Assembly (NCBI GenBank): GCA_002269645.1 | Contig: NIVC01002321.1 | Location: forward strand, 1-64,000 | DNA: 64,000 nt | DNA from: Macrostomum lignano | Lineage: Eukaryota | Reading direction: 5' to 3' | Shown here: one piece after another, positions 12,001 through 46,345 of the stretch | Numbering within the stretch: the first letter of the stretch is position 1 | How the letters are laid out: every line of letters starts with the position of its first letter | The notes under the pieces: generated by a model | What the model was told of the DNA's origin: nothing | Seen by the model: the letters and a program-made list of their open reading frames with translations, nothing else | The model's database searches: none | Translations under genes and position numbers: made by a program

Positions 12001-12211
12001 CTACTGCCCAGGGCCCTTCGAAAATACCTAGCTAGCTAAGTAATAGTCTTCAGGAGCCCGCGACCCAGGGACAACCTTAGTAGAAGGACACTGCACTCGA
12101 ATTTCTTAGACATGGCTGGGTGCGGTTAAGAAACGTATATTTTTTGTTCTGGAAGTGTATCTTCAGAGATTCATTTTAGCATTTACACGTCAACAAAGTC
12201 CCTTAACTAAC

Positions 12212-12725: not shown

Positions 12726-12854
12726 TTTTGAGGCCTGAAATTTGGCATGATAGGGTTGGTGGTTGTCTGTTTTTATATAGTAAAACAAATTCATAATTCA
12801 GGCTCTCAGAAATCGCAAACCAAAAGCGCGGATTGGTTGCGGATTCATCTTTGA

Positions 12855-16289: not shown

Positions 16290-16805
16290 TCGTAGCTCTA
16301 GGGTCTTTAGCGCCAGGGGCTTTAGCACCCGGGTCTTTAGCACCAGGGGCTTTAGCACCAGGGGCTTTAGCACCAGGGTCTTTAGCACCAGGGTCTTTAG
16401 CTCCAGGGTCTTTAGCACCAGGGGCTTTAGCACCAGGGTCTTCAGCACCAGGGGCTTTAGCACCAGGGTCTTTAGCAGCAGGGTCTTTAGCAGCAGGGTC
16501 TTTAGCACCAGGGGCTTTAGCACCAGGGTCTTCAGCACCAGGGGCTTTAGCACCAGGGTCTTTAGCACCAGGGTCTTTAGCAGCAGGGTCTTTAGCAGCA
16601 GGGTCTTTAGCAGCAGGGTCTTTAGCACCAGGGGCTTTAGCACCCGGGTCTTTAGCACCAGGGTCTTTAGCACCAGGGGCTTTAGCACCCGGGTCTTTAG
16701 CACCAAGGGCTTTAGCACCCGGTCTTTAGCAACAGGGGCTTACACCAGGGGCTTTAACACCAGGGGCTTTAGCACCAGGGGCTTTAACACCAGGGTCCTT
16801 AGCAC
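16290..16805. repeat. 15-bp minisatellite (about 34 units)
   Basis: Unit ctttagcaccaggg(g/t). One minus frame reads (GAKDP/GAKAP)n. Confidence 0.95.
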
Positions 16806-17675
16806 GAGAGGACAATCACAGTGGTTAGGGTAAGGCTTATCTAAGAAATTTGCAACAGGGCTGGGTGTTCTATGTCTCTCCGGGCCACCTGTTGAAGCTG
16901 CCGATGTCGTCGGGGCGATGAAAGAGTGTTTGAGTGACCAGCAGTGGTGTATTGAATACACTGGCGCCTATGGAAAAACCCGAACTTCTGACAGTTTTTT
17001 GAATAATTTGAATTTGGATTGAATAATTTGTTTCACTTTGGACGCAAATTTGAATTCTTCGAAATAAAAACGAGAGCCAGCAGAATATTTGAATGCTCTG
17101 TATAGTTGTATAATATTTAGCTCTTGTGCGTCAACTCACATTTAATTGTATTCGAAAAATTCGATCACAAACTATGTGGTTTTACATAATGTCCAGAAGA
17201 AGAAAAAATAATTTGAGTAATTGTAAATAATTTTTCTAAGATAATGAAAGATTTTCATATTTTCGGTAGCTCAGTTGAAAAGAAAACAAGGTAAACAAGT
17301 GTATGAGTTTCAGTTCTCAGAGTATCGAGGTGATTCTCATGCGATTGCACAGCGGCAGTTCGTCATGGAGAACCAGCAGAAAAAAACTGAAAATCAGAGA
17401 GAGAAAAATCATATTTAAGAATAAGAAACCGAAAAAAAGTCCATTTTTGAGGAACGTACGCAAAGCGACACAAGACAGGGCAGAGGAGAGGGGTTTAAAA
17501 CTGGTTACCGACTAGTCAAAACCAGTCGCAAACCAACGCATTTTAGGCCTTTTATAATTTTTGGGATAAAATAGAATTAACCAGTGTCTCAACCATTTCG
17601 CAAGCTATCGTATTGATTTGCTCTTTGACCATCTTCAGTTCTTCGGTCAGATCCAGCAGCTCCAAGCCTCGCCTC

Positions 17676-18431
17676 TCAGGTCAGGACGAACTTCACCCAG
17701 TCGGCGCTCGTCTCGATCGCCTCCTCCACCTGAGCGTCGGTGAAGTGCAGCAGGCGGCATTTCTTTTGCTTCTTATTGAACAGCACGTGCTGGCTGTCCT
17801 TCGATCGCGTCGCCATGGCAACGCACTCGATAGCACTGTCGATGTTGGTCAGGTCAGTGAAGCAGTACTCAGAGCTGGGATTGTAGCTGGACCGCTTGAA
17901 CGGAGTTCGCCTCCACTGGCCGTTGAGTTGGGCCGCAATCGGAGCAGCTGCAGCGAACTCGCACGCAAATCCAAGTTTGTAAGAGCAAAAGAAGTCGGCG
18001 AGTTTGCTATTATTTGTGTATGTACAAACGCAGTCCTGCTTACCGCCTACGTTGTTTGGGTCATTGCTGACCCACAGAGAGGCATTCAGAGGCAGATTGT
18101 CTTTGCCGAACACCGTCTGCCAGCCCTCCCTGCTGGCGTTTCTCTAATCCGCCATGTCGGTCACTCCGAGCCAGATTTTATTGCCAGTTTGAAAACTCGG
18201 CATGCTCGGCAGCAGCTGCAGCGAGCCGTACGAGTTGATGAGCTCGCCTCCGATCGATGAGCACTGCCGATTGGCCTCGCACCAGGTGAAGCTCTGGGAT
18301 GGGTTCACGAATATGCACCTGCCGGCCTCGATATAGAAGGGAGCGGGGCACTGAGCCAGCACTGGCAGCAGTGAGCAGAGCAAACTCAAAATAATGTGGA
18401 TAAATGTTCGCACTGCGACTGACCTTTGCAT
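17676..18431 (-). pseudogene. Intronless secreted C-type lectin + PAN-like protein, copy 1, with one in-frame TAG
   Basis: Signal peptide, then CPAPF...FTWCEANRQCSSIGGEL...IWLGVTD, NDPNN..QDC..C......FACE and SAIECVAMA...VLFNKKQKKCRLL. ORFs 18144..18431 and 17676..18113 share a frame. TAG at 18144-18146 is GAG in copy 2. Confidence 0.85.
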
Positions 18432-21075: not shown

Positions 21076-22234
21076 TCAGAGGTGAGTTAGCATTTTTGGT
21101 GTGCGAGTCGTTCTGAACAGCTGATTCACTAAAGGGACACGGGGGCGACTCCTGGTGTTCCCGTGCCCCTGAGTCCTCGAGTCATTGGCGTGGAAACTCC
21201 GGATCCCGCTCGCGGTGGAAGGAGGCTTTGGAGTGGCTCTGGCCGCACCGGCGGCATCGGTGAGCAAATCGGCACTGAGCTCTGGAGCAGCCACCAGCCC
21301 GGTTGAAGTCAAAGCAAATTCCATGGCCTCCTTTTCGAGTTGCACGAGCATTTGCCTGGCGCCATCAAGTACGCTGCCACAAGCCCTAGGTCAGATGCTG
21401 GCTGATTCAAACTCTGATTCTGCTGCTTTTGCGCGCGACACTCGTCATTGAACCGCATCACCTTCGGCCGCTCAAAGCCAAGATCGAACAGTTCGACAAC
21501 CCGAGCATTGATACTCAACCAGCTCCGACACATCCACGGTTCCCGTCTCGGAAAGACGCACCAGCTTGCCGTCATGCAACATGTGAATCAGCGCGATTGC
21601 GTTTCCAGTAATCCAGTCACCGAATGACATCGACTCAACAGCCGCTGACTTTGACTTCATGCTCACGCGGCCCGATTTATCGACTGTGGTCAGTGGTGGC
21701 CAACCCGGCATCCTTCTGCATACGGCTGCTTAGATGTTCCACTGGCCTGTACGCCCCTCCGGCAACTGTCCCTTCTGACTCAGGGTTGGGGCCCTCATTC
21801 AAAACCCTCTCAAAAAGGCACGACATCTCACTGGGGAGATCATTGCGTCTCCGTAAATCGCGAGTGTCAGCTTCTAGAGCGGCTTCTTTCTTGCGCAGAG
21901 TCAGGATGCGCACCCTCTTCTCCGCGAGCTCCAGCTCCTTGTCCAGGTCGCCTCCCACAGCGCCAGTCGGGCCCCTGCCGCCTTGAGGCTCAAAGGCCCG
22001 TCCGCTGCTTTTGCTGCTTCTGGAAGTGTTTTCCGTGTCTACGAGTAGTTCTTCCTGACGTGGATCAGTCAGGGCGTTAAGTTCCAGCTGCGTTGCTTTG
22101 TGTTGAGCAGCCAAGCGTTCCCTGAGTACTGCCTTACGGCCGTTTGAAGAGAGGCCTGCCTGTCTAAGCGCGGCCTTCAGGCCTTTCACAGTCTCGGGCA
22201 TATGCACTGTGTGGCTTGAGTCAGCCATTGACAA
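21076..22234 (-). mobile_element. DIRS/Ngaro gag-like ORF1 with N-terminal SAP domain, frameshifted
   Basis: TVKGLKAALRQAGLSSNGRKAVLRERL fits SAP. Downstream fragments (MSFGDWITGN..., KVMRFNDECR) lie in shifted frames directly upstream of the RT. Confidence 0.65.
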
Positions 22235-24631: not shown

Positions 24632-25026
24632 CACGCCGTACAAGCCGGCTAGGCAAACCGGTCAAAAGTTAGCAAAACATTGTGCTGTTTTTTTCAGGCA
24701 ACTCACGCAGTGTAATAGGAACCGTTAGCTGTATGAAACCTGCGTGTGATAGATGCGGACTGTCATTCAGAGGCTTCAGCACCTGGGGCACCTGGGGCTT
24801 TAGCACCTTAGCTTTTGATTTCTATATAATCCTTGCCTTTTAAAACATTGTCTCTAGAAATTCCTGATAGTTACACTGACGCTACACTCCTGCGCTGATG
24901 CTATCGACTTTTTGACGGCCGATATTCAAAGCACTGCAAGTTTCTGAATCCTTCATACAGAAAGCTAGCTATCCCACTCGTATTTCTAAATAAATTCACA
25001 GATTTGTTTTTCTAGTGGGATACCTT

Positions 25027-25815
25027 GCTAATGATATGGCACCCCTGCTAATGATATGGCACCCCTGCTAATGATATGGCAACCCCGCTAATGATATGGA
25101 AACTCTGCTAACGATATGGAAACTCTGCTAATAATATGACACCACTGCTAATGATATGGCAACCCCGCTAATGATATGGCACCCCTGCTAATGATATGGC
25201 ACCCCTGCTAATGATATGGCACCCCTGCTAATGATATGGCAACCCCGCTAATGATATGGAAACTCTGCTAACGATATGGAAACTCTGCTAATAATATGAC
25301 ACCACTGCTAATGATATGGCAACCCCGCTAATGATATGGCACCCCTGCTAATGATATGGCACCACTGCTAATGATATGGCAACCCCGCTAATGCTATGGA
25401 AACTCTGCTAATGATATGGCACCACTGCTAATGATATGGCAACCCCGCTAATGATATGGCACCCCTGCTAATGATATGGCACCACTGCTAATGATATGGC
25501 ACCACTGCTAATGATATGGCACCACTGCTAATGACATGGCACCCCTGCTAATGATATGGCACCACTGCTAATGATATGGCACCACTGCTAATGATATGGC
25601 ACCACTGCTAATGATATGGCAACCCCGCTAATGATATGGCACCACTGCTAATGATATGGCACCCCTGCTAATGATATGGCACCCCTGCTAATGATATGGC
25701 ACCCCTGCTAATGATATGGCAACCCCGCTAATGATATGGCACCACTGCTAATGATATGGCAACCCCGCTAATGATATGGCACCACTGCTAATGATATGGC
25801 ACCACTGCTAATGAC
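25027..25815. repeat. 20-bp tandem array (about 39 units)
   Basis: Unit gctaatgatatggcacc(c/a)ct with variants aaccccg and aaactct. Confidence 0.97.
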
Positions 25816-26333: not shown

Positions 26334-26511
26334 TAAGAATTTCAAGCCTCTAATTGAAATGGAGGAACGCGATGTACGGGTTTATTACAAGAGAGGAACA
26401 CATACAATTAATTTGTCTTCGTCGGTGATTACACTTGAAGTTTTCCTGTTATGTGTTGAGTAGAAGACCAGAACATGTAGTAGTAGAACAGAGCTATAAG
26501 TTGTTAGAAAT

Positions 26512-26738
26512 GGTTTGCAGCCTAGTGGTTAGAGCTCAAATGCCGTGGTTTCGATTCTCGAATTTGTGTCCTTGAGCACTTAACTCTGCATTGCTTCAGT
26601 TCACCCAGCTGTAAAATGGGTGCGAGCATTAGCTGGGGTAATTGAGGGTGTGTGTGGCGACCCCCCCCCCAGTCCCTGGATTGAACAGCCGTACACAGCC
26701 TTCATATGAGCCGCGCAATGGCTGGGCAGGTGTAATCA
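26512..26738 (+). mobile_element. SINE family A copy
   Basis: gcctagtggttagagc...ggtttcgattctcg head, CORE-like body and gcaggtgtaatca end. Confidence 0.8.
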
Positions 26739-26749
26739 AAATCGGCTCT

Positions 26750-27420: not shown

Positions 27421-28345
27421 AGATTAACAACAATTTAGGAATGCAAGTTCAAATTTCGATAGTTTATTTTTCTTTTGATTCCATCAGGGTGAAAAACTTT
27501 TCAAGCAAACTGTCTAAAATTGAAACGAAAAGTTATAATTTTTCATAGCTGGTTGAAGTTTATTGCACAGTTTAATATTAGAATACAAAGAGATTTCCCC
27601 ATTTGGAAATGGAACAGAAAAAACCACAACAAAGACGGGTAAAAAACAATTCCACAATGCTTCTTAATATTCGGACCAAAATTGAAACGATCGAACCAGC
27701 TGTTAAGTCTGTTCTCAGTCTGTTCTCATGGTGCTTTTATTGCGATTGCACAGTCGGCTCTTCGGTCAGATCCAGCAGCTCCAAGCCTCCTCGCCTCTCA
27801 AGTCAGGACGAACTTCACCCAGTCGGCGCTCGTCTCGATCGCCTCCTCCACCTGAGCGTCGGTGAAGTGCAGCAGGCGGCATTTCTTTTGTTTCTTATTG
27901 AACAGCACGTGCTGGCTGTCCTTCGATCTCATCGCCATGGCAACGCACTCGATAGCACTGTCGATGTTGGTCAGGTCAGTGAAGCAGTACTCAGAGCTGG
28001 GATTGTAGCTGGACCGCTTGAACGGAGTTCGCTTCCACTGGCCGTTGAGTTGGGCCGCAATCGGAGCAGCTGCAGCGAACTCGCACGCGAATCCGAATTT
28101 GTCAGAGCAGAGAGGTCGACGACATTAGTGGAGCTTTCAAAGGTGCCTACGCAGTCCTGTTTACCGTCTTTATTGTTTGGGTCACCGTTGATCCACAGAG
28201 AGTCATCGAGAGGCAACTGGCCTCTGCCGAACACCGTCTGCCAGCCCTCCCTGCTGGCGTTTCTCTCATCCGCCATGTCGGTCACTCCGAGCCAGATTTT
28301 ATTGCCAGTTTGAAAACTCGGCATGCTCGGCAGCAGCTGCAGCGA

Positions 28346-28821
28346 CCGCCGGCCCCAACAGGGACCGGGTGCCCCAGTCCATCGGGGGTACGGTCATGGA
28401 CACTGCCTTGTCGTGGCGACCCGGCTTAATCCTGTCGTCGGCTCCCGCCGGTTGCCGGCGGCAGGAGAACCAAAGTGTCCACCCTTCGGCTGTCGACAGG
28501 GACACAGCGGCTGCCTGCGTCCCTGCCCCCCTGCTGGCAGGCAGGCGCTCCGACTCGGCTGGGAGTGCGACCGACCAGGCGCCGAAGCCAGGGTCGGCCG
28601 GTCCAGCACTCGCCCCAGGCGAGGCTGCGTCTGGTCCCTTGGCTGACTCGTCTGGGATGACGTTGGCGTTGACTGGCTCCGGTGGGAGGATAACATGCCA
28701 TGCTCCCACGCTGGCAGCAACCACCCTTCTGGAGTCCAGGATGATGCGTGGCTTGTCCCCTCCCTGCCCGGCGTTCGGAGGCGCTTCCTGGCAGGCTAGC
28801 CCCTTACAACAACAACAACAA
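28346..28821 (+). mobile_element. 476-bp non-autonomous RTE-like retro-insertion with (CAA)n tail
   Basis: 15-bp TSD cagcagct(g/t)cagcga (28331-28345, 28822-28836). Tail (caa)5. Copy 1 of the host gene shows the empty site. Confidence 0.85.
28349..28480 (+). ncRNA. HDV-like self-cleaving ribozyme fold
   Basis: P2 GGACACU 28398-28404 pairs with AGUGUCC 28474-28480. P3 GCC/GGC around L3 UUGUCGU. P4 UCCUGUCG/CGGCAGGA. J4/2 CCAA. P1 3' strand GACCCGG has imperfect partners. Confidence 0.7.
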
Positions 28822-29530
28822 CAGCAGCTTCAGCGAGCCGTACGAGTTGATGAGCTCGCCTCCGATCGATGAGCACTGCCGATTGGCCTCGCACCAGGTG
28901 AAGCTCTGGGATGGGTTCACGAACACGCACCTGCCGGCCTCGATGTAGAAGGGAGCGGGGCACTGAGCCAGCACTGGCAGCAGTGAGCAGAGCAAAATCA
29001 AAATTGCCCGAATAAAGATATGATATGGCGGTGGGTCTTGCATTTAGAGCAGGCAATTACCCAATTACCTATTTTGGTCTTGTTTTCAGTTCAGTTACGA
29101 AAAATTTTTTAGTCAAGCCAGTTTTAATAAATTAGAGGTGTTTGGGTAACGTCCAATGCTATTTAAAGTTTTAAACACCTTTAGTTATATGGATTTGCTT
29201 GATTTTATAACGCAAGAATTCCTCATTGGCTGCTATTAGCACTGGCAATGGCGGCTCAGTCCCTCCACTGGTCACTTTCTCTCACGGGTATCATACATCT
29301 CATAGGTAGCAATGTGGCTGTACATCGATAAAATAGCCTTGCATTGCCGCATAATGCATGGGCATAACTGCATGTAAACACATAAATTATGTGTGCTAAA
29401 AGACAAAAACACAACTTTAATAGGCTATTAAAGCCAAGCTGCATACCTAGGTTCGCACAGGAATTTTAATTGAAGGGGTCGCAACCTTAAGGGGCCCAAA
29501 GCTGCATACGTAGTTGCTTGGCACCTTAAG

Positions 29531-29811
29531 GTCTCTTAGCCCCTGTCTCTTGGTTGGCGCCCCTGTCTCTTGGTTGGCGCCCCTGTCTCTTGGTTGGCGC
29601 CCCTGTCTCTTGGTTGGCGCCCCTGTCTCTTGGTTGGTGCCCCTGTCTCTTGGTTGGCGCCCCTGTCTCTTGGTTGGCGCCCCTGTCTCTTGGTTGGTGC
29701 CCCTGTCTCTTGGTTGGCGCCCCTGTCTCTTGGTTGGCGCCCCTGTCTCTTGGTTGGCGCCCCTGTCTCTTGGTTGGTGCCCCTGTCTCTTGGTTGGCGC
29801 CCCTGTCTCTT
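29531..29811. repeat. 20-bp tandem array (about 14 units)
   Basis: Unit tggttgg(c/t)gcccctgtctct. Confidence 0.97.
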
Positions 29812-30712
29812 GATTCTCAGTTTCCCAGTAGTTTTTCTGGGGGGGGGGGTGGCAGTTTTATGTTGCATTTCACATACTCGTATTGCTTTCGTATCCATTT
29901 AGCTTGAGACGAAGTCGCTTGATGAGACAAACTGGACATTAAAGCAAAAGGACTCTGGGTTTGTCTCCTCTGTGAGTTAAGGACCACTACAGTAGAATAT
30001 TATGTTACTTAAGTAGTCCTTGGTTGCGATGTTTGACAGAGTCAAACAATGGACGCAAACATCTTGTTAATTCGTGGAAAAATGCTTTCCACGAGTTCCA
30101 TGCTTCATTAAATTGATGCATTTTGGCATGCAGTGGAGGAGGCGCAAAAACTGGGGAAGCATGCAGTTGCTAGGAGGAAAGGTTTGGCATGTAGCTCGTA
30201 TTGAGTGAGTTTCCCCACCTAACGGAAGCCAGTTGATGGATAAACAAGTCTTTATGTCCATTAGGGTTGATCGTCTAGCATTAGCTATCGTTTTGGCTAT
30301 AGAATCTAGCTGGTGCAATTAGGAGCCTAATGGTGAAAAAGTACTCGTAGGTCATAGTCTGAACTGCGGAGCATTCGATAATTAACCACTGTCGATGGAA
30401 AATGGAAAACAAAAAAACTGCATTTTGCCCGCCTCGACCAGAGTAAGTTTGCGAACCTGCATGATCCCCCTTAATGCTGACTTTCTGGTACATTTCCTGT
30501 CAAAACCAACTGGTAGAGTAGAAGCTGTTGCAACAGCTCTGCTCTGAGATCTCACATGCTATACGTGTACGATGGTTAAGGCTTTAACTTGAATGTTCTA
30601 CTTACATGTTAAATGTTGCATGAAATCCACTGCAAAATACATGTATACAATTTGCCAACCCGCTATCGTTCACCCGCTTTCAAATTCTGCCCGCGGGGGA
30701 TTTCTATGAAAA

Positions 30713-33536
30713 CCCTAGTTGACAATCTTACAAACTGACTTGTCAGATCTGATTTCTCTTGAATAGTCTTATTAAATCTTCTCAGATCTGTTCAGAAAAT
30801 GTAAGTGACAGATAAAAATCTATGATTAGTATGTTTTGTATGCAAACAATATTTTCCTGCTTTAAAAGTCGAAAAAGCTTTTATAATGTGATAATTTAAT
30901 TCACTAATTCACAGTTTAGTTGATCTAACAGATTTCGCAAGGTGATAATGCAAGTTGCGATTGCATATGTATCGAAGGGAAAATTTATAATAGGTAAAAG
31001 GAGTACTGCACAGCAGAATTGTATTACATATAAAATTTCAGCATGATGTGTTTCATTTTTACAGTTTAGTAATCTTAAACTGATATTCCTATGTACATGT
31101 GTACACATATGTAGTCATTTTTACACTGTCGTAAAATATTTGCTAAATGTATAAGAAACTATAAAAACGTATTTGTACACTTAAGTAATATATAATAGTT
31201 GTATTTACTTATCTAAATGGGCAAAAAGGCAAGTTTATAAATAAAAAATGTGCCCTGTTTGTTTTAACTATGTTTTCTTTTAAATAAGCTTCTGCTGTAT
31301 TTACTTTCGTAGATCGATTTATCGGATATTCATCTAGGCTACAAATTTACCAACGCGTCTGCTAATTTGTAGGCCTAAGCCTATGAAAAGTTTTTTGCTA
31401 CTTTCTATTTTAATTTTTCAGTAAATACTTTATTTGCAATGCAAGTGACAAGAGCAGCCATTAATTGCCCGAGTCCAGGAAATGAAGCTAAAGTCTTTGT
31501 GTCTTTGTACTGCATTCTGTGCTGTGGTAGCATTTTTTACAAATCTTCAAGCTAACAGACACTCGATTTTCATCATGTTCTTTAGAAGCACGCCTGCGTT
31601 GAGATTTTGTAAGTATGGAGCTCTACATTGTTAATTAGAGAAAAAATGATGATAAGCATTGGCCTAGCCCTACTAGCCTACCTAGCCTAAGCCAAGCCCT
31701 AGGTAGGCACATGATGAAGATGGCCACAGCTCTAAATATCTAAATAGATCATAGGCCTAGGTCTATATATTTCCTCATTTCCTATTATTAGTATAATGGA
31801 GATAAGTAAGGGAGATAAGTACTAGGGCATATATATATATATAAAATGGAATTAGATTAGGCCTAACCAAACAAAAACTTGAAAAAAACAATTTTGTATT
31901 GTGAATAAAGTCTAAAAATCTGTTATTGCATGATATTTATATATTCAATTATAATTAAACTTCATAATTTACATAATGATGGCACTAGGGGGGGGGGCCT
32001 AAGTTATGAATTAATATTAAAAAGTTGATAATACAGAGATTAAAAAATTCTATGCTGTAGCCATCTTGGACTTGGTTTTACACCCTACATGTATCACTAA
32101 GCCATGTTGCCCTTCCATTGTCATTCTATCCTAGTTTGGTTTTCACATTTTTTTTCTAATTTTGACCTAGACCTAATTTTTTAAAAGTATTTGGGCTAAA
32201 AATATAGCAGTGAAGTATAATTTGCATATTTAAAAACATTAAGGCAAAACCTTTATGCTTTTTAATCATTGGGACAGATATTTTAAACCAAATGTGTAGT
32301 GTATAAAGGCATTGTCCAGTGTCCAAGCCATTAATTCTTTTATACCCGCAGCCACAGAGCCAACAAATCTGCTGTCAAGTTTGATTAATATGGTAAATCA
32401 TCAGATTTTAGAAAGAAGCAAACAAATGCTTTCAAGAAATCATGCAAAATATTGATTTTAACCTACCTGCAACTTGAGTAAGTATTGTGCATATTTCTCT
32501 GAAAAGTACTAGTGTATTTCATTATCATTATTTCAATTATTGTATATGTATACTCCACTTTATTTTTATTTCAAGATGCTTTTCGGGCTTGCTATGGATA
32601 GACACTGGAGAGCTACTTGGCTGTTGCTCAACCAAGCATCTAGATATTGTGCCAGGACAAGTGTCAAGAAGCACAGGTGTCAGCAAGCCAATCTGCCAAT
32701 GGCCGCAGCAGATGGCACTATGAATGGTGCTTGACTTGGTGTGTCAGTTTTTATAAAATTCTTCTTTAACTTCAAAGTTTCGGATTTGTTTGTTTTTTAT
32801 GTAATGCACTTAAGACACAAAATTAAAAAAGTAAGGTAAAAAATTACAGTTGCTTTTAACTTTTTGATTGATTAATTAACTAATTGCAGGTAAAACTTGA
32901 AGGAATTTTAAAAGTTTCCTTCATAAAGATGTCAATTAAAACAATTTTTGCTGTTGGTTTTAGTGCTAAATAGTTAAATAGAAGTACTGGTATAATAGTG
33001 AGTTAAACATCTTTTAATTGTTATTAAATTGTTATGCAGTGCTTAAAAGACCTTGCTTTTTGGTTTAGTTGTGACTGCATTTGCAGATGAATTTTGTTTG
33101 CATGTTTCTTTGTGCCAATTTTTCTGTCCTAAATAAATTGCCAAAGTTGATTTTTGGTTTTCTAATGCCTACAGTCTGTCTTGAATATAATTAAATGACA
33201 ATAATAAATGCTTTTTTCTAATAAATCCAACCTTATATTAAATTATTTATTGCTGTACATAAACACAAATATAAAGCTTTTTAAGCAATTAATTGTTTAT
33301 ATTCTTTTTCCTTTTATTAATATTCGAGCAAATCGAATATTAACCAAAAATGCTGACCATTGAATTCTGCATAGATAAACATATGCAAAATTTCCTGCGA
33401 TTTCTTGCCAGATCTTACCCAACTCTTGTCAAATCTTACAGGATACCTTAAGTAAGATCTTATAATTTCTTTGGAATTATTGAAGGAATTGGTAAGTCAG
33501 ATTTTGTAAGATTTGGCAAGTCATTGTCAACTAGGG
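30713..33536. mobile_element. Non-autonomous CMC/EnSpm-like element 1
   Basis: TIR ccctagttgacaat / attgtcaactaggg, 2-bp TSD AA, subterminal aatcttaca-type repeats and an AT-rich interior. Confidence 0.6.
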
Positions 33537-33683
33537 AAGATACTGGCGGGAGATTGCAGTGTTCTGCATACTAGATTGCAATGTCCTGCAAAAAGATGCT
33601 AGCTCCATTTCAGTTCGTACTGATCCTGCACTGTAGCCTGCACTGCGCACTGGCCTGCCAGACGACTCTAATGGATTCGATCA

Positions 33684-36600
33684 CCCAGTGAAAAATGATA
33701 CATGGATTCCACGTGGGTTCCACGTGGCCATGTGGAATTTAAATGTTTCTTTATTTTTTGCAAATTATTAACTTAAAGATGACATAATGGTATGCAAAGT
33801 ATTTTTTATGCATTATTTTTTTATTTTTACTGTCCTAATGTTGATGTGGATTTTACAAGGAATTCATGAGAAATAAGCGTATATTGATTCAACATGGAAT
33901 CCACTTCGGTAAAAAACTGTGATACACCACATTCAGACATTTTTAGGAAATTACTATAATTAATTATTATATTTATATGTTTTTAAGTAAAAATTAATAT
34001 CTTAAAGCTAAATTATAATCGGCAAATAAGACACTGTTTGTTAAAATAGACAAAATAGAAGTGAACAATAAAAAACGCTTTGTGCTTTTTAAAATTAAAT
34101 TTATTTTATTTTATATTCATCAATGTTTTGATTCAAGGCCTTGAAAGATAAATTGCCTTGTTTATGGCTATTTAAGCACCTTAAAAATTTTAGTAGACCT
34201 AGCCTAGAGGCAATAACTTATCAGGCCATAGCCTCCATGAGATTAGAAATTAGATAAATCAGTATTTTATCATAGATAGGCCTAATACTTTTGGTAAAAT
34301 CCATGATAAATTTATTTAGGCCTAGGCCTCCAATTTCTAGGAATCCCATGGCCATGTCCATAGATTGGCTACTCATTTTTTTAACTTAAATAGGCCTTTA
34401 GAAGTTCATAATTTCCTCTTAGTCCTACCTATTAGTCCTATCTATTTATATGTATGCTTAATAGGTGTATTTTAAGCTAGGCCTGCTATAACTATCAATT
34501 TAGGTCCTTCTATTTTAATTAAGGTTAGGACTAGCTTGACTTTGTGAATTGTGACTAGTCAATCTAGTTAATATGTTAAAAATCAATTAATTTATGATTT
34601 TCTTCAAAAAAGTCTGTTAGCATCTTTTGGACTTGTTGCATATTTTAAAAACAATATTATTAATTATAATAAATAATTCTTTGCAATTACACTTGCAACT
34701 TGCTTTTGGCATAGCTAGCCTAGCAGATCCCTAAGGTTGCTAATAAAAATAAAGAATGATTATTGTAAATTTGATCTGATTTAGGCCAAGTCCAGAATTT
34801 AATTTTAAGCCATAGGGCATAGCTATTTAGGCTTAGGTTAGGCCTAGGCCTAATGTTTAATTATACTATTTTTTTTATTAGAGGCAGGGGGTTGTGTGCA
34901 CCCTGGCGCACTTTAAGCGACATAGGCACACAACTGGCAAGAGGCATTGCTGCCCATTCCGCCGACTCCCCTGAGCAGGCACACAAGTATTCGGATATGT
35001 ATGCAAGCACACTCACACAGGAATATACAGCGGCCCTAGCTTTATTTATCGTTAGGCATGTATACTTCACTGTGCCTTGGGGGGTTGGCTCTCAAGGCCA
35101 TTAATTGCATGAGCAGAGAGCCAAGCTGAGATTCCAATTCAGCCCCAAATTAATATGATTGCACTTGGATTCGAGCTTGGGTCGCTGGCACACCAGAGCA
35201 GCTGCGCTACCACTTGGCTACGGCCCCCCTTTTAATCATACTAGGCCAGCAAATATGAAAAACATGCATTGCTTTGCCTAAATACTTTATAGTCTAAAAT
35301 CAATTTTAAAATAAAAAATTAAATTTATAGAAACATATATTAATTATTTTTATACTTATTATTTTAATTTTATTAATTTTATTTTATTGATTGACTTAGG
35401 TAGGGTTTTCTTTTTTGCTAGAGACAAGGTGCAAAATCATACCCTATGCTCACTTTTAGGGTTTTATGATTTTAAGGCTTAGAATGCAGTTTCTTTTTTT
35501 TCTTATATAAAGGCAATGCAAATAAGGCTTCAACATAAAAATAGGTAATGAGATCGCACCTAAACTGTATCAACTTTTTAATTTCAGTTTTCAAGGTACA
35601 ATTTTAAGATTTAGGGTGCACTTGACTTACTTGACTTAGCTGCAGGGGGCTCTGTGCATCCGGAAACAGCAAGGAGGCATTGCTGCCCATTTCGCTAACC
35701 CCTGGCAAAGGCATATGCACACTTTGCGCTTAAAAAATAAACCTAGGACTTAGGCCTAGTTAATTTTAAAATAAACTTTATTAAGTATTCATCCTTAAAT
35801 TAGTTTTATGAATTATATCAATATTATCTATCAATCTTAATTGGCAACAATTATTTTTCTATTTCATTTCAGCCTAACATTACATGGCCCATCCTCAAAC
35901 TTGGATGTCACCTTGGTCTTGCCTTTGAAGAAGCATGCAAAGCTACTTGGAATTGGAATTTAATATCTCGAATGCTACCTTTTGTGAAGCAATGGTAAGT
36001 TTTAGTTATAAACTGATTTTTTCTGTCATCAAAATCTGTTATAAGATCAAAATCTATCAAAATCTATTACAAAATCTATTATCAATCTGTTATAAAATTC
36101 TGTAATTTAACCCTTTTCTTTTCTAAGGTTGCTCACCTGACCTGAAGAAGCAGCATTCTGGCAATTGGCAGCAGCATGTTTCTGACTGTTCTAATTCTGG
36201 TGCATTATATTATTGTTAATTAATTAATGCTATTGACAATGTCAATTTCAAATTATATATTATATCATATGCGCAGCGCAACTCTAAAGATATCAATATC
36301 TACATCAGTGTGTTTATTCTTTGTGTGCTAGTGACTCACTACTGTACATAAATACACCTTACTTATTGATACATCCTTTTTGAATATATTTTTGTGCAGA
36401 AATATTTTTGGCTATAGCTAGTGTTTTATCTGTGTTTCAGTTTCTTTTATATGGTATTGAGATCTGGGGTTTGTATGAAATTTTGAGATCTGGTATTATT
36501 TTGAGATTTAGGATGCAACAATTTATTATGGCAACCAGTATAATGGCTGCTTACTCAATGACAATGTGGATTCTATGTGAAATACATAATTACTTCCATG

Positions 36601-36715
36601 TGGATCTTCCATGTGGAATCCATATCTTGATTCCACATGGATGGACGGAGACAAATGCACATATGGATTTCATATGAAAAATCCACATGGAATCCATATC
36701 ATTTTTTTCACTGGG
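33684..36715. mobile_element. Non-autonomous CMC/EnSpm-like element 2
   Basis: TIR cccagtgaaaaatgatacatggattccac / gtggaatccatatcatttttttcactggg-like, 2-bp TSD CA, and subterminal ccacatgg/ccacgtgg repeats. Confidence 0.65.
34896..35229 (-). mobile_element. SINE family B, most complete copy
   Basis: Minus-strand head gggggccgtagccaagtggtagcgc...agctcgaatcc (A and B boxes). 3' end cgcttaaagtgcgccagggtgca. Confidence 0.8.
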
Positions 36716-36779
36716 CAATTGAGCTCTGTCGCAGAACAAGCAGGCAACACCCCGATAATTAGCGACTCTCCATTCTAGC

Positions 36780-37000
36780 GCTGATGTCTGGCTCAGCTGA
36801 AAGAGCTCAACGCCTGCTAGACCGGCTGACGGCGGCGGCCGCTGTGATTGGACTGTCCGTGAACACCAAAAAGACGATGGTGCTGACCGTACCGACGGAC
36901 CTCCCAGCGGAGTCGATAAACTGCCGCTGCAAAAACTGGCAGGCGCGGCATTGCTGCCTCGCTGCAAAGAGTTCGTCTACGTACTCTAGCTAGCTTGGCG
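36780..37000 (+). mobile_element. LINE (RTE-like) reverse transcriptase fragment
   Basis: SAERAQRLLDRLTAAAAVIGLSVNTKKTMVL...KEFVY corresponds to RT domains 6-7. Confidence 0.8.
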
Positions 37001-40000
37001 GTCTGGTGCCAAGCATCACGAACTACATGTACATGGCACACGGCGCAGGGCTCTTGCCTGGGGCGCATTCCGCACCGTGCGGACTGTCCGCCCTGCCGGA
37101 TCGGCTGAGAGGGAAATAATTTCTTTAAAAAACTTTTTATATTGCTCGAGAAATAATGAGTCTCCTATACTAAACACAAATGTACAACGACAAAAATTGG
37201 ACTTGGGATAGGGGAGAACAAGCAGCAATGGGGTAATAAAAGGGACTCATTTATGAGCTTAAGTTTACATAATATTCATTTACAAGTATAATATTCGTCG
37301 CGTTTTTGCCAAACCCTGCTTCCTAGTGTCACTGTGTCTCTGTGAGCCGAATGACGTATTATTTGTGTACATATAGGTTACTCGGGCTCCAATTTATAAG
37401 CTTGTTGACGACAGGCCCTTTTTAAAAACATATACTCGGAATTACTCAGATTTTAGTGGCACATTCTGATTAAAAAACTCTGACTAGAAACTATAGATTT
37501 CACGAGATTCCGAACCTAGTGTTCTGATTATTTTGTTACAAGAACTGAGGGCACAAAAGAACTTTAACTGCTTCTTCACAGTTAGGTAATTTGGTAGTAA
37601 AACAAAATAAAAGTAAGGAAATTTGTTTTGGCTAGCAAAACGCTTTTTTACTTCTTTCTCAAACGATTTTTTAAAGAAAAGTTAACTATATAAAACATTT
37701 TCTTTAATAAATAAATTAAAAAATAGAACTTGTTAAGATATGATTTTGTCAATTATGTTTATTTTTCTTGAGAGGAAGCGTTTTTTTACTGCAAGTCAGG
37801 AGTATTATCTTAGCTTGCGTTTGCTATATTTTTTTAAATTTATTCCGTGGAAGTAAAAAAATAATATTTTTTAAACATTTTATTTCGTGTTCTGAAAAAT
37901 TTCGTTGCTAAAACATTCCCACTGAGTCACTGACTGGGTTTATTTTTTGTGCACAGTGTGTGTATGCACCCTAAATTTTAAAATTGCACCTTGAAATTAA
38001 AAAAAGTGGGTGCAGTTTAGGTGCGGTCTCATAACCTATTTTTCCGTTGAAGCCTTTTTTGCACTGCCTTTAAATAAGAAAAAAGAGAAATTGTACTCCG
38101 AGCCTTGTAATTGTACCCAGAAAGTGAGCATAGGGAGGGGAGGGTGAGGGTGCAATTTTGCACCTTGTCTCTGGCGAAAAAAACCCTGCCCACTGACATC
38201 ATTCCCTTTTTCAAGTGAGGTAGTTCTGGAATCTAATATGGTATTTATAATTTATGGTAGGCCTAGTTCTTTTTTAAAAGTAAAATTTTATTTAATCTTC
38301 TAGGCTCTTTATGACTATATAATATATTCTTTATGATAATATTTAAAAAAATATGAATACAAAAAGCTCAAATATTCTATATGCAATGCCTACAGATCTA
38401 TAATTATAGTAAAGTCAATATTAAGAGATATGGTCACTGTTATTCTGTTACTATCATTAGGGCAAAATCTTTAATTAAAGAATTAACATCTATATGACTG
38501 GGTAGTTCTCAAATTAAGGTCATGATATTTTGGTACAGAAAAAAAGTTTTTGAATAAAGTAATTATTTTGCAAAAACGATTCTTTCATCAATTTAATTAA
38601 AAAACTGCCGTTAAACCACAAGAAACCAAATATTTAAGACGAAATCTAGCAATTTGTTATTTTTCGCAACGGAAAATAAAACAACCAAAAATTGTGAAAT
38701 AATGCAAGTTTTCTTTTATTTTTTTTATGAATAAGATACATCTTTTATTCTATTGTTACTATTTGATAAGTATTATTTCAATAGAAAATGTTATTTTTAA
38801 ATCAACATTTTGTTTTTTTCGTCTAAATTGCTTGTATTTAAAATTATCGCGTAACAAGAAACACCTGAAATAATTGATATTGTACCACTCAAGAACTTAA
38901 TTATTGTACTTAAACACCAAAATATGAAGCTTAAAATCTACAAAAGTGGTTTAGCTAAAAATTAGGCTTGCAAAATATGTCTTTTAAAGCATTAAAACTT
39001 TTGTAACTCATATTTGTAACTCAATATTCTAACTCAAAAAAAGTTTTTTTGAGTTAGAATATATATAGAAAATGAGCTAGGAAGCCATTTCTTTTAAAAC
39101 CTAAAATACATGTATTTTTTTCGAACAGACTTGCGTCTTTTTAAAAAGAATTCAGCAAGCATTTATATTCTGCAGTAGTATTTATATACTAGGCCTATTT
39201 TACTATTTTACTATACTATTTTCTTATGTAATTAGGCTGCATAACTACTAAAAGAACAGCTTATAAATTTAAATTAAATACTTTGGTCTTGGTAAGTTAA
39301 TTGGCCTATTACAGACGTCTGACTCGGCAGCCACATGGATCACTGCACAATTGCTCTGGCGAACCTCTGTAATCAATTCTGGCCCTGCACTAGCTGTCAT
39401 GCTTGGTATACAATTCGTCTCAATTAATAAATTACATCGATGCCTGCAGAACTAACCACATCCAAAGGACCACTGCACATCTTAGCACTGTGGCACGTAC
39501 AATGATGCTGGTGTTCTGGCAGAGAAACAGGTAAAAGTGCAGCAAATGGCATTACATATCCGTCTGAGAGGTGTGCAGTTTACAGTGCTTTAGCCAATTG
39601 GGTCAGTAGAATTAAATCGATCACATTAGAATAAAAGTAGATGTTTGCTGTACATGTAACAAACCAATAGCAAGATACTATTGGATGTCTTTCCTTTCTA
39701 CTGATGCTCGTACATCAGCTGGCTGTCTCCACAGGCCACAGCTCATCGCATTCTCTGTTAACCGCCGCTTCAGTGCTGTCAGCCGCACTTAACTGTGTCT
39801 GGCCTCAGTATATAGTCAGTCCCAATGGAAAATCATCATCTAAAACATCTCTAAAGCATAATTGTCAATCGAAGAGTAATATAAAATATAGTATGTCTGT
39901 TATGGTACTGCCATGACTTATCTGTTAAACACTTCAAAAATTTGTGTGGCAGCACTCTGTAGAGATTCCATCTTTCTGTACCATATTTAATATTACATTG

Positions 40001-41275
40001 CCAGCATCAATGGCAATTAAGTTTTTTCTTTTATCTTTTTTCTTGTTAGTAGCTATATGCATCCAAAGGTGGAAAATATCAACTGAATGTTTAAGTTGCT
40101 TCATGTATATCTTTAATGAATTGCAGAACATATGAGAATGAATTTAATGTTTCAAAGAAATTAATTTTTTGTGCTTCAGACAGCTAATTTCATTGATAAT
40201 AAATCAGATGCAAAATTGTTTTAATACTATTTCTTGACAAATCAAATCATGCAACTTTTTTATTATTCGTTACTCTTATTTTATTTTCAGTTTCTACTAC
40301 CTCTTGTTTTGACTCATTATGTTTACTTGTAACTTACAATACAAATTGTAAATCAGTTTAAAAAAAATTGTGTGAGAACAACAAAAAACAACTGTTTTTA
40401 AGAGAAAAATAGTCGATTTTATCTACATAAATCAAATTCTGTTTGTTCTGACTAACATATTGGGTGATCAATAGCAAAAATTCATCTAAATACATAAAAA
40501 AACATCCAAAAAACCTAACAATGTGCTGAGAAATTTTTTTTTCATAACTAGAGAAAAAAAAGTGGTACTTTTTCTCATCCCACAGATGAGGACTTTGAAT
40601 AAAAATAACTTTGGTGCTACTTGCTTTGTTGTAGTCAGCAAAATCTCTCTTTGTTAGGTTAATTTTGTGCTATTGAAAAAAACTTAAATTGAATTTAATT
40701 AACTTTTCTTTTTTAATATAGAATGAAACTGCCTTAATTGATATTTTAGTGTTAGATATGACTATCTTTCTTAAAAAAACAGCAGAAAACGCAGCTATTA
40801 GCTTATTCTATCAACAGAACAAATTAATTAAAAGTGGATTTTTTAATCATTCATAATGTTACGTTTCTAGCAAAAATCGAAATAGCAACATCTGCTTTGC
40901 AATCGAAAGAGTTAAATGGGTTCTAGGTTGTGCTAACCAAAGTTTTAAATAACATTTATCAATTTTCTTCTTTAATAAGACCACGTGAACAGAATGTAGC
41001 TTCTCTAAAGTGGGTATTATAGCTCGTGCGATAAAAAAAATATATATCAAAAAAATGAAATAGCGCACTCTATTGAGATTAACATCAAAAGTTCAATGTT
41101 AAAAAAGATTAAGACCCATGAGAGGCATTTATTTTTTAAGTCCATTTAGAGCTAAAATAAGAAAAGATTCAATATTTCGGGCTGATTTTCAAAAATATTT
41201 GTTTCACTGCTTACGACTAAACTTTGAGAACAACCCGACTATATCATTAAATCATTGTTCTTTGATATCTTATAC

Positions 41276-42344
41276 CAGGGTCTCAATTGTGTATTAGTGC
41301 TAACTAGAACAAGAATCCTATCTTAGCTAAATGTATACCAATTGATGCCAATCGCCAGTATAGGCCTATGTTAAAAAACAAAAGATTCCTAGCTAAAATG
41401 TATGCCAAAAATTTCTCTTAAAAGCATTTGGTTTTCATGAGTTAAGTCTTCTAAGAAAAGGTTTTGTATATAAAATTAATGATGTACAAAATTTACATTT
41501 TTAGCAATACTTTTTACTAATTTTATTTCTTGTTAATTTTAAAAAAAGAAAACCAGTTATCACTAACGTTATAGACTATGCTAATTTTTTTATAATTTAC
41601 ATTAAAATGTTAATTTATATTACAATTTTCATGCTTGGCCAAAATTTGTATATAAAAAATTAACATGAATTTGTATGTCAATTTGTACTCCAACTCTGAA
41701 AGGGGTCATTCATATATTAGAATTTTCCCAGACTCTGGAAGGTTACATATATGCTAGAAAATTCTGGTGTACAAATGACCTCTTTGAAAGTTGGCATACA
41801 AATTTTGTATATAAACTTATGTAAATGTTTTTGGCATACAAATTTTGACACACAAATTCATGTCAATTTTTTTCACATACTAATTTAGTAAATAAATTTA
41901 TGCTGTGCATGAAAATTATAATTCAAATGAACACTTTTATGTAAAATAAAGGGAAATTTTTATAGTCTTGAAAGTCAATGATAAATTTTTTGCTTCTTTA
42001 AAATTAACAATAAAAAATTAATTATTATAAATTATTGCTAAAAATGTAGATTTTGCATTATTATTTCTATAGGTTTAATTTAAGTTTGTTTAAAATAAAA
42101 ATATTTGTAATATTTTAAAAAGACTTTTTGTACAAAAGTCTTTCTAATCTTAGGAAACTCTACTTGTGAAAACCGAATGACCTTTTTTAAAAGGAATTTT
42201 TGGCGTATATTTTAGGGAAATTTTTTGTTTTTGGCATATACTGGTATACATTTAGCTGAGATAAGATTCTTGCTCCGTCATACACTATTACACAATCCAG
42301 GCCCTGAGAATTTTCTGGCATATATGTAACTTTCCAGAGTCTGG
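41276..42344. mobile_element. AT-rich foldback element / compound MITE
   Basis: About 41276-41715 is an imperfect inverted copy of about 41770-42306. 41728-41765 is an inverted copy of 42307-42344 (2 mismatches in 38). Confidence 0.65.
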
Positions 42345-46149: not shown

Positions 46150-46345
46150 GTAGGTTGAAGTTTTGGTTCGGTTTCTTAGAAAATTATTTTTTGAAGGCTG
46201 GTTTTACATAAATATATAGATTAGCTAGAAAAATGACAACATTGAGTTTGTTTGTTTGAATAGACACGCATGTATTTATATGGTATTTACTAAGGTATAT
46301 GCTTTACAACGATCGACTGCTACAACTCAACTGCTTAACCTAACT

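What the first reader, a model, noticed from the sequence alone, without database searches (positions are those of the whole stretch)
28349..28480. HDV-like ribozyme at the 5' end of a short non-coding retro-insertion
Seen: a nested double pseudoknot can be drawn by hand. P2 is 7 bp, P3 is GCC/GGC with a 7-nt UxxxCGU loop, and P4 is 8 bp plus an internal GCCGG/CCGGC hairpin. J4/2 is CCAA with the putative catalytic C at 28470. P1.1 is a single pair (G28410-C28425) next to a U-U, as in CPEB3-type ribozymes. P1 is imperfect: CCGGGUG 28365-28371 gives 6/7 but competes with a J1/2 hairpin, and CCGGCCC 28349-28355 gives 5/7 and starts 3 nt from the insertion end. Established: RTE, R2 and L1Tc elements use HDV-like ribozymes to define 5' ends.
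Basis: partly seen in the sequence, partly recalled or inferred. Interest (0 to 1): 0.7.

Follow-up and report, generated by a model that had tools for sequence, protein, structure and literature searches.

The report
Probable HDV-like ribozyme heading a retro-insertion
A 476-base non-coding retrotransposon copy that interrupts a lectin-like gene begins with an RNA fold matching the core of the known HDV-like self-cleaving ribozymes, but the helix that sets the cut site is weak, so it is a plausible untested new example of a known arrangement.

Summary
The retro-insertion is real. It spans window 28346-28821 and ends in (CAA)5. It has 15-bp target-site duplications, and an uninterrupted paralogous "empty site" lies at 18210-18224. 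It has no protein domain and no tRNA-type head.

P2 is 8 bp. P3 is GCC/GGC with loop UUGUCGU. P4 is 13 continuous bp. J4/2 carries C28470-C-A-A. P1.1 is one possible pair.

A descriptor scan finds this as the only hit on both strands of the window. A perfect-P2 core is expected 0.18 times per shuffled window. It is expected only 2.9e-4 times in the first 200 nt of the insertion, and 2e-5 with a P4 helix. The evidence is therefore the co-location with the element's 5' end.

P1 adds nothing. A 6/7 match appears in 69% of shuffles. The best P1 puts cleavage 19 nt inside the insertion, and the terminal P1 is one of seven 5/7 matches. No Rfam HDV-type model matches. No second copy could be found, so covariation is untested.

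Verdict: a plausible but unproven HDV-like ribozyme in a short non-autonomous non-LTR element. It would be a new member of a known kind, of moderate-to-low interest.

The parts
28331..28345 (+). 5' copy of the target-site duplication, CAGCAGCTGCAGCGA
   Evidence: It is identical to the empty paralogous site at 18210-18224.
28346..28821 (+). The retro-insertion: 476 bp, non-coding, sense on the + strand and antisense to the interrupted lectin-like gene
   Evidence: It is absent from the paralogous site at 18180-18248. No Pfam family matches any long ORF, and a protein search found nothing. The whole element folds with z = -2.9.
28346..28364 (+). 19-nt leader lying upstream of the best P1. It is unexplained.
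   Evidence: It is unique in the window. It can pair 28348-56 with 28385-94, and that stem is compatible with P1.
28365..28371 (+). P1 5' strand, best candidate (CCGGGU plus a mismatched G). The predicted scissile bond is A28364/C28365.
   Evidence: It makes six contiguous Watson-Crick pairs with 28419-24, duplex -11.1 kcal/mol. It is the only P1 option found by the descriptor. It is not above chance.
28372..28396 (+). J1/2, with a possible small hairpin (28372-75 with 28384-87)
   Evidence: Structured J1/2 domains are known in natural HDV-like ribozymes (PMC4908430).
28397..28404 (+). P2 5' strand
   Evidence: It makes 8 Watson-Crick pairs with 28474-81. P2 is present in every predicted fold.
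28405..28417 (+). P3 (GCC/GGC) enclosing L3 (UUGUCGU)
   Evidence: It matches the conserved U...CG pattern of L3 (PMC6326823; PMC3774820)..
28418..28425 (+). P1 3' strand (G, then ACCCGG) followed by C28425, the possible P1.1 partner of G28410
28430..28466 (+). P4: a 13-bp helix (28430-42 with 28454-66) and its loop
   Evidence: It is part of the minimum-free-energy fold.
28467..28473 (+). J4/2 (GAACCAA), with the putative catalytic C at 28470
   Evidence: C-N-A-A lies directly before the P2 3' strand.
28474..28481 (+). P2 3' strand, which is the 3' end of the ribozyme-like domain
28482..28806 (+). GC-rich, highly structured non-coding body. It is presumed to be the 3' module recognised by a partner reverse transcriptase.
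   Evidence: The function is inferred, not shown.
28807..28821 (+). (CAA)5 microsatellite tail
   Evidence: It is the only (CAA)n>=4 or (TTG)n>=4 run in the window.
28822..28836 (+). 3' copy of the target-site duplication, CAGCAGCTTCAGCGA (one mismatch)
18210..18224 (+). Uninterrupted (empty) target site in the paralogous lectin-like gene

Best explanation
Window 28346-28821 is one copy of a short, non-coding, non-autonomous non-LTR retrotransposon.

Its first module runs from about 28365 to 28481. This is an HDV-like self-cleaving ribozyme, or a recent relic of one. The rest is a structured 3' module ending in (CAA)n. It is comparable to the R2 'SIDE' elements and to NARTc.

Proposed mechanism, in order:
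1. The element has no promoter of its own and is transcribed as part of a longer host transcript (inferred).
2. The 5' module folds into the nested double pseudoknot (P1 28365-70/28419-24, P2, P3, P4, P1.1).
3. C28470 acts as general acid, and the RNA cuts itself between A28364 and C28365. This frees the element RNA from upstream sequence (inferred from the family).
4. A partner LINE's reverse transcriptase recognises the 3' module and tail. It inserts the RNA by target-primed reverse transcription, which produces the 15-bp duplication (the duplication is shown; the partner is inferred).

The 19 nt between the duplication and the predicted cut site would be a 5'-junction extension of this copy. 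It could come from a template jump, from non-templated addition, or from copying an uncleaved RNA.
For: The insertion, the TSD, the empty site and the microsatellite tail are shown directly.

The element is non-coding and has no tRNA, 5S or 7SL-type head.

The HDV-like descriptor gives a single hit in the window, at exactly this place and in the sense orientation.

A strict core is expected 2.9e-4 times per local shuffle, and 2e-5 with P4. Controls altered at the catalytic position give 0, 1 and 0 hits.

The P2-enclosed domain 28397-28481 folds as a discrete unit even within the whole element. Its z-score is -4.0.

The pseudoknotted fold is roughly as stable as the best nested fold. The nested part is -58.1 kcal/mol and the P1 duplex about -11, against -72.5 for the minimum-free-energy fold.

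Literature precedents:
- P1 of 6 or 7 bp, and structured J1/2 domains (PMC4908430).
- An active ribozyme with C at +1 and a single-pair P1.1 (PMC3185411).
- 5' extensions of 18 to 156 nt produced by template jumps (PMC3414825).
Against: No Rfam HDV-type family matches, even at E<=10.

P1 is no better than chance.

The predicted cut site is 19 nt inside the insertion. In proven cases the duplication abuts the cleavage site (PMC8501958; PMC3185411).

The +1 pair is C-G, not G-Y. P1.1 is a single, reversed G-C pair. Three extra nucleotides separate P4 from the catalytic C. J4/2 is C-C-A-A, against the C-R-R-A of one published descriptor (PMC6326823).

The minimum-free-energy fold sequesters both P1 strands and replaces P3.

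There is only one copy, so there is no covariation evidence, and there are no activity data. The descriptor tolerances were fixed after the candidate had been seen.
Confidence: 0.5

Rival explanations
1. The insertion is a 5'-truncated (dead-on-arrival) copy of a longer LINE. It would consist only of a long, structured 3' UTR. The HDV-like drawing is then a coincidence in GC-rich, helix-rich RNA, and 28346 is just the point where reverse transcription stopped.
For: Truncated copies with intact 3' ends and simple-repeat tails vastly outnumber full-length elements, and they are easily mistaken for SINEs (PMC2887409). About one relaxed-descriptor hit is expected per shuffled window, and 0.18 strict-core hits. 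P1 is at chance level. There is no Rfam support. The predicted cut site does not coincide with the insertion's end. The nested minimum-free-energy fold does not need the pseudoknot.
Against: A chance core would have to fall in the first 136 nt of this one insertion, in the sense orientation. That has probability 2.9e-4, or 2e-5 with P4. No coding remnant of a reverse transcriptase is present in any frame. No LINE with a matching 3' end lies in the window.
Confidence: 0.3
2. It is a genuine HDV-like ribozyme, but it uses the terminal P1 (28349-55, or 28348-52 with G28348 at +1). The cut would then fall 2-3 nt from the insertion boundary. The hairpin around 28361-80 would be a structured J1/2 domain, as in the mosquito drz-Agam-2 type.
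For: The cut site would lie next to the duplication, as expected for a ribozyme-terminated element. The first 'CCG' of the insertion could be microhomology with the target's GCCG. J1/2 would hold a stable hairpin, and such domains activate large HDV-like ribozymes (PMC4908430). In the 28348 register the +1 nucleotide is G.
Against: Only 4-5 contiguous pairs form, followed by two adjacent mismatches. The duplex energy is -5.6 to -9.0 kcal/mol, against -11.1 for the internal P1. It is one of seven 5/7 matches in 52 nt. P1 mismatches are uncommon and associated with loss of activity (PMC3774820). The 28348 register leaves no partner for P1.1.
Confidence: 0.1
3. The P2/P4 domain is a functional RNA structure of the element, but not a nuclease. 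It could be a binding site for the partner reverse transcriptase, or an IRES-like or promoter-associated 5' structure. The core nucleotides would then be a relic or a coincidence.
For: The domain is stable and modular in every fold. The 5' regions of R2 bind the R2 protein and are thought to act like an IRES, independently of cleavage (PMC6765202). In L1Tc the first 77 nt are both a promoter and a ribozyme (abstracts).
Against: The element has no ORF to translate. This idea does not explain why L3 and J4/2 carry exactly the catalytic-core pattern.
Confidence: 0.1

Closest known systems
L1TcRz, the HDV-like ribozyme in the first 77 nt of L1Tc, and its non-autonomous derivative NARTc (Trypanosoma cruzi)
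   Same: Both are ribozyme-type folds at the 5' end of a non-site-specific, TSD-flanked non-LTR element and of its short non-coding derivative. Both have C at +1 paired to G, a GC-rich P1, a 3-bp P3 and a single-pair P1.1 (PMC3185411).
   Different: In L1Tc the cleavage site is nucleotide 1 of the element. Here the best P1 starts at nucleotide 20. L1Tc and NARTc have poly(A) tails and a 77-nt compact fold. This element has a (CAA)n tail, a 26-nt J1/2 and a 13-bp P4. No sequence similarity was tested or shown.
R2 SIDEs and R2/R1 hybrid SIDEs of Drosophila (Short Internally Deleted Elements)
   Same: Both share the architecture of a 5' HDV-like ribozyme joined directly to a 3' UTR that a partner's reverse transcriptase recognises. 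Both have no ORF and no Pol III promoter. Variable 5' junctions and template-jump extensions are documented for SIDEs (PMC3414825).
   Different: SIDEs are site-specific in 28S rDNA and have identified autonomous partners. This element sits in a protein-coding exon, and its partner is unknown.
drz-Agam-2 type ribozymes of RTE elements, and baggins ribozymes
   Same: Both are large HDV-like ribozymes with a structured J1/2 and an extended P2, at the 5' end of promoter-less elements with simple-repeat tails (PMC4908430; PMC6765202; PMC2887409).
   Different: The Rfam models do not match. P2 here is 8 bp, against 12 bp in Agam-2. No RTE coding sequence is associated.

Membership tests
HDV-like self-cleaving ribozyme | Nested double-pseudoknot topology: P1 crossing P2, P3 inside, P4, P1.1 | tested here: met
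   All helices can be formed. P1 has 6 bp, P2 8 bp, P3 3 bp, P4 13 bp and P1.1 1 bp. This rests on complementarity in one sequence only.
HDV-like self-cleaving ribozyme | Conserved core nucleotides: L3 U...CG (reverse-wobble U/G), and a catalytic C followed by N-R-A directly 5' of the P2 3' strand | tested here: met
   L3 is UUGUCGU (28408-14) and J4/2 is C28470-C-A-A. Probability is 2.9e-4 per local shuffle. The stricter C-R-R-A form of PMC6326823 is not met at the second position.
HDV-like self-cleaving ribozyme | Uninterrupted P1 of 6-7 bp starting at the scissile bond | tested here: inconclusive
   28365-70 with 28419-24 gives 6 contiguous Watson-Crick pairs. An equal match arises in 23-69% of shuffles. 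The terminal alternative has two adjacent mismatches.
HDV-like self-cleaving ribozyme | G at +1 paired with a pyrimidine, and C-G pairs in P1.1 (consensus descriptor of PMC6326823) | tested here: not met
   The +1 pair is C28365-G28424. P1.1 is a single G28410-C28425 pair beside U/U. The active L1TcRz also departs from this consensus (C1, single-pair P1.1), so the feature is not absolute.
HDV-like self-cleaving ribozyme | Match to curated covariance models (Rfam HDV-type families) | tested here: not met
   There is no hit at gathering scores over the whole window. No HDV-type hit appears at E<=10 on 701-nt and 151-nt slices. The models omit the pseudoknots, and the family is poorly conserved in sequence (PMC4870747).
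HDV-like self-cleaving ribozyme | Compensatory changes in P1-P4 among related copies | not testable with these tools
   There is no second copy in the window. None was found in the protein, metagenome, genome or viral collections. The source organism is not represented: the best FMO match has 57% identity.
HDV-like self-cleaving ribozyme | Mg2+-dependent site-specific self-cleavage that is abolished by mutating the catalytic C | not testable with these tools
   This needs an in vitro transcription and cleavage assay.
Ribozyme-terminated non-LTR retrotransposon (R2, RTE, L1Tc, Perere-3 type) | [quoted passage not shown] | tested here: not met
   The best P1 predicts a cut 19 nt downstream of the TSD. 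The terminal P1 would be 0-3 nt away but pairs poorly. For comparison.
Non-LTR retrotransposon insertion (target-primed reverse transcription) | Target-site duplication, an empty site, and a 3' simple-repeat or A-rich tail | tested here: met
   The TSD is 15 bp (14/15 identical). The empty paralogous site lies at 18210-18224. The tail is (CAA)5.
SINE (Pol III-transcribed) | A head derived from tRNA, 5S or 7SL with an internal promoter | tested here: not met
   ARAGORN finds nothing. There is no Rfam tRNA, 5S or 7SL hit. A true tRNA-derived SINE family elsewhere in the window looks quite different.
SIDE-like internally deleted element | 5' and 3' ends shared with an autonomous partner LINE | not testable with these tools
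   No LINE with this 3' end lies in the window. The source genome was not available.

The most novel reading that the evidence does not exclude
The ribozyme really does cut at A28364/C28365, and the 19-nt leader is a regular part of the element. After cleavage the leader stays clamped to J1/2 by the 9-bp helix 28348-56/28385-94. The reverse transcriptase then jumps from the new 5'-OH end onto the clamped leader. Sequence upstream of the cut site would thereby be inherited. This would be a way for a ribozyme-processed retroelement to keep an upstream leader or promoter-proximal segment.
Probability: 0.05. Interest if true: 0.65.

Novelty: new member of a known kind. Interest (0 to 1): 0.35.

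Why it matters
If it is active, this would be another independent case of a promoter-less, non-coding non-LTR element that frees its own 5' end with an HDV-like ribozyme.

The host is an unidentified non-arthropod invertebrate. Its closest protein matches are to molluscs, at 55-57% identity.

The ribozyme would be an unusual variant. It has C at +1, a reversed single-pair P1.1, and three extra nucleotides before the catalytic C. These features would help define how much variation the HDV-like active site tolerates.

This copy also disrupts an exon of a lectin-like gene. That makes it a concrete example of insertional gene inactivation.

None of this would change current understanding. The arrangement is already described for R2 SIDEs, NARTc/L1Tc and RTE.

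Tried and rejected
**Rfam**
- Rfam gave no HDV-type match. This held at gathering scores on the whole window and at E<=10 on 701-nt and 151-nt slices.
- The weak hits were sR32, weev_FSE, 6C and two miRNA families. All are far below their gathering scores, and I rejected them as chance.

**Searches for other copies, needed for covariation**
- BLAST of the element against the window found only the paralogous flanks.
- A protein search with the element-spanning + ORF found nothing.
- A 20-mer from the core gave one hit in JGI metagenomes. It lies in a bacterial coding region and shares nothing else with the element, so it is chance.
- A 3'-end 22-mer and a core 22-mer against bacterial and archaeal genomes gave 0 hits.
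- The core 20-mer against viral contigs gave 0 hits.

**Identifying the organism**
- An exact-protein look-up of an FMO exon was not on record.
- A homology search gave at best 57% identity, to Mytilus.
- The source genome and its near relatives are therefore not in the collections. I judged further protein searches with element ORFs futile and did not run them.

**Alternatives considered and rejected**
- An alternative HDV-like fold using the extreme 5' end as P1. The first 8 nt are perfectly complementary to 28454-61, but no P3/L3 motif precedes that strand.
- Twin-priming or inverted-copy origin of the 19-nt leader. Only 13/19 positions match the reverse complement of 28443-61.
- Leader copied from elsewhere in the window. 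There are no other matches at up to 3 mismatches.
- Coding remnant of a LINE ORF. No Pfam hit appears in six ORFs on both strands at E<=1.
- tRNA-derived SINE head. None is found.

**Papers not held**
- Ruminski 2011 and Webb & Luptak 2011 could not be read.
- The descriptor was therefore assembled from other papers and from general knowledge.

Full report
**1. What is at the locus**

Reading 27800-29600 and comparing the region with the rest of the window shows a clean insertion.
- The 45 nt before position 28346 are identical to 18180-18224.
- The 39 nt after 28821 match 18210-18248 at 97%.
- The two matches overlap by 15 nt in the uninterrupted copy.
- A three-way alignment confirms the result. 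A 476-bp segment, 28346-28821, is inserted between two copies of CAGCAGCT[G/T]CAGCGA (28331-45 and 28822-36). The paralogous site at 18210-18224 is empty.

The segment ends in (CAA)5. This is the only (CAA)n or (TTG)n run of four or more units in the window.

The flanks belong to two paralogous minus-strand genes, at about 17640-18431 and 27759-29043, which are 91-97% identical. The joined flanks give a weak C-type-lectin match (Pfam Lectin_C, E = 6.5e-4, just below the curated cut-off). The insertion therefore splits an exon of a lectin-like gene and lies antisense to it.

The insertion is non-coding.
- None of its six longest ORFs, on either strand, matches a Pfam family at E<=1.
- The ORF that spans the element has no homologue among 5.8 billion proteins.
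- It has no tRNA-like head and no Rfam match of any small-RNA type.

The first part of the finding, "a short non-coding retro-insertion", is confirmed.

**2. The drawn ribozyme**

| Element | Coordinates | Note |
|---|---|---|
| P2 | 28397-28404 with 28474-28481 | 8 Watson-Crick pairs |
| P3 | GCC 28405-07 with GGC 28415-17 | encloses L3 |
| L3 | UUGUCGU, 28408-14 | |
| P1 3' strand | 28418-24 (G, then ACCCGG) | follows P3 directly |
| P1.1 | C28425 with G28410 | beside a U/U pair |
| J4/2 | GAACCAA, 28467-73 | C28470-C-A-A abuts the P2 3' strand |

28365-71 gives six contiguous Watson-Crick pairs plus a G-G mismatch (duplex -11.1 kcal/mol). 28349-55 gives 5/7 with only four contiguous pairs (-5.6 kcal/mol).

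**3. Is it more than chance?**

I wrote a descriptor from published features of the family.
- P1 of 6-7 bp.
- P2 adjacent to a 3-bp P3.
- L3 of the form U...CG.
- A catalytic C followed by N-R-A next to the P2 3' strand.
- J1/2 of up to 60 nt.

The sources were PMC4908430, PMC3774820, PMC6326823 and PMC3185411.

On both strands of the window the descriptor gives exactly one hit: this one, with P1 at 28365 and the catalytic C at 28470.

That alone is not significant.
- Block-shuffled windows give 1.03 hits on average with the relaxed descriptor.
- They give 0.18 hits with a perfect-P2 core.
- Decoys with A, G or U in place of the catalytic C give 1, 1 and 7 relaxed hits, and 0, 1 and 0 strict-core hits, in the real sequence.

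The signal is the place. In dinucleotide shuffles of the insertion's first 200 nt, sense strand only:

| Requirement | Frequency per shuffle |
|---|---|
| Strict core | 2.9e-4 |
| Strict core plus a P4 helix of at least 6 bp | 2e-5 |
| As above plus a P1.1 pair | 0 in 100,000 |

A back-of-envelope estimate that takes the natural P2 helix as given is my own inference. It asks only for P3/L3 and C-N-R-A at the helix's two ends, and it gives roughly 1e-4.

P1, by contrast, carries no information.
- A match of at least 6/7 to GACCCGG occurs in 69% of shuffles of the 52 upstream nucleotides.
- Six contiguous Watson-Crick pairs occur in 23%.
- The terminal 5/7 match is one of seven such matches.

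**4. Thermodynamics**

The nested minimum-free-energy fold of 28346-28485 is -72.5 kcal/mol. It keeps P2 and P4. It replaces P3/L3 with a GCC/GGC(28423-25) plus GUCG/CGAC hairpin, and it buries the P1 5' strand in a 5' hairpin.

I then forced P2, P3 and P4 and left the P1 strands and L3 free. The rest folds to -58.1 kcal/mol. Adding the P1 duplex (about -11) brings the pseudoknot to within a few kcal/mol of the nested fold, before any coaxial stacking, P1.1 or Mg2+ contributions. The HDV-like fold is plausible but is not predicted to dominate.

The domain 28397-28481 stays a discrete unit when the whole 476-nt element is folded. The local z-score is -4.0 on the + strand and -3.1 on the - strand.

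**5. Comparison with curated models**

No HDV-type Rfam family matches. This holds at gathering scores and at E<=10 on 701-nt and 151-nt slices.

This is a real negative, but a weak one. The family has only about five conserved nucleotides and is normally found with descriptors, not with models (PMC4870747).

**6. The cleavage-site problem**

In proven ribozyme-terminated elements, the cut site is the element's first nucleotide and lies next to the target-site duplication (L1Tc; Perere-3 twister variants).

Here the only good P1 puts the scissile bond between A28364 and C28365. That is 19 nt inside the insertion.

The 19-nt leader (CCGCCGGCCCCAACAGGGA) has these properties:
- It is unique in the window.
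- It can pair 28348-56 with 28385-94 in J1/2 without disturbing P1.
- By eye, its first 8 nt are complementary to the P4 3' strand.

The terminal P1 that would fit the boundary has two adjacent mismatches. P1 mismatches are described as uncommon and are linked to lack of activity.

Possible reconciliations exist. 5' junctions of R2 and its SIDEs vary, and extensions of 18, 80 and 156 nt made by template jumps are documented. These reconciliations are inferences, and I could not test them.

**7. Departures from the consensus**

- The +1 pair is C-G rather than G-Y.
- P1.1 is one reversed G-C pair rather than two C-G pairs.
- Three nucleotides (GAA) separate P4 from the catalytic C.
- The second J4/2 position is C.

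L1TcRz is active with C at +1 and a one-pair P1.1, so these features are unusual but not disqualifying. The A at -1 cannot extend P1 onto C28425. This favours P1.1 (compare).

**8. Relatives**

- There is no second copy in the window.
- None was found in the protein collection.
- The JGI metagenomes gave one chance bacterial hit.
- The prokaryotic genomes and viral contigs gave nothing.

The source organism is not represented. The best match to an FMO exon is 57% identity (Mytilus), with an unnamed ENA contig (56%), the gastropod Batillaria and Xenopus at 53-56%.

The window has a CCCTAA-type degenerate array and many minisatellites. It also carries a tRNA-derived SINE. This points to a non-arthropod invertebrate (inference).

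**9. Verdict**

The insertion is certain. The HDV-like core at its 5' end is too well placed to dismiss: local p is about 1e-4 to 3e-4. However, P1, the cut-site position, the absence of any model match, and the absence of covariation or activity data all keep it unproven.

| Reading | Estimated probability |
|---|---|
| Genuine or recently decayed HDV-like ribozyme in a SIDE/NARTc-like non-autonomous element | about 0.5 |
| Truncated LINE 3' UTR with a coincidental motif | about 0.3 |
| Ribozyme using the terminal P1 | about 0.1 |
| Non-catalytic structural role | about 0.1 |

Even if it is true, the arrangement is already known from R2 SIDEs, L1Tc/NARTc, RTE and baggins. It would be a new member of a known kind.

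Noticed in passing
window 6526-6739, 8648-8902, 26510-26740, 48565-48843 (+) and 63536-63789 (-): A tRNA-derived SINE family has five copies, 76-93% identical. The head carries A-box and B-box-like motifs (TAGTGGTTAGAGCG ... GGTTCGATTCTCGA). It has a highly conserved central core (TGTGTCCTTGAGCAAGACACTTAACTCTGC). Its 3' end differs from that of the insertion studied here, so the partner LINE is probably different. ARAGORN does not call these heads as tRNAs.
   Followed up: partly
window 17640-18431 and 27759-29043, minus strand: Two paralogous C-type-lectin-like genes lie about 10 kb apart and are 91-97% identical. One is split by the retro-insertion. The other, which carries the empty site, has a stop right after '...GVTDMAD' where the interrupted copy reads on. 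Either it is also defective or an intron starts there.
   Followed up: partly
whole window, e.g. 556-1170, 13492-14793, 16300-16805, 25026-25814, 29539-29812, 43840-44646, 51294-52326, 54877-55839, 59754-60413, 61036-61596: Minisatellite arrays are unusually dense. Periods are 15-60 bp, with up to about 40 copies each, and there is a (GAGAG)122 tract. Several arrays create long spurious ORFs.
   Followed up: no
window 46354-46681: A degenerate array of CCCTAA-type (telomere-like) units lies between two exons of a flavin-monooxygenase gene (exons at 45520-46158 and 48935-49462).
   Followed up: no
window 30000-44000: A long AT-rich block (GC 25-37%) directly follows the GC-rich lectin/insertion region (GC 55%).
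   Followed up: no
window 12207-12794 (-), 21677-22234 (-), 52474-53292 (+), 60607-61089 (+): Other gene fragments recognised by Pfam are an amiloride-sensitive sodium channel (ASC), a SAP domain, an amyloid-precursor-like N-terminal plus copper-binding domain, and a KLRAQ coiled-coil domain.
   Followed up: partly
window 28843-28884 (+): A weak match to the archaeal C/D-box sR32 model (17.4 bits against a gathering score of 40, E = 0.033) lies inside the lectin-like exon, just downstream of the insertion. It is most likely chance.
   Followed up: no
L001 3692-3711 (JGI contig Ga0075471_10004432): This is the only metagenome match to the 20-nt ribozyme-core probe. It lies in a GC-rich bacterial coding region and has no further similarity to the element, so it is a chance match.
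   Followed up: yes
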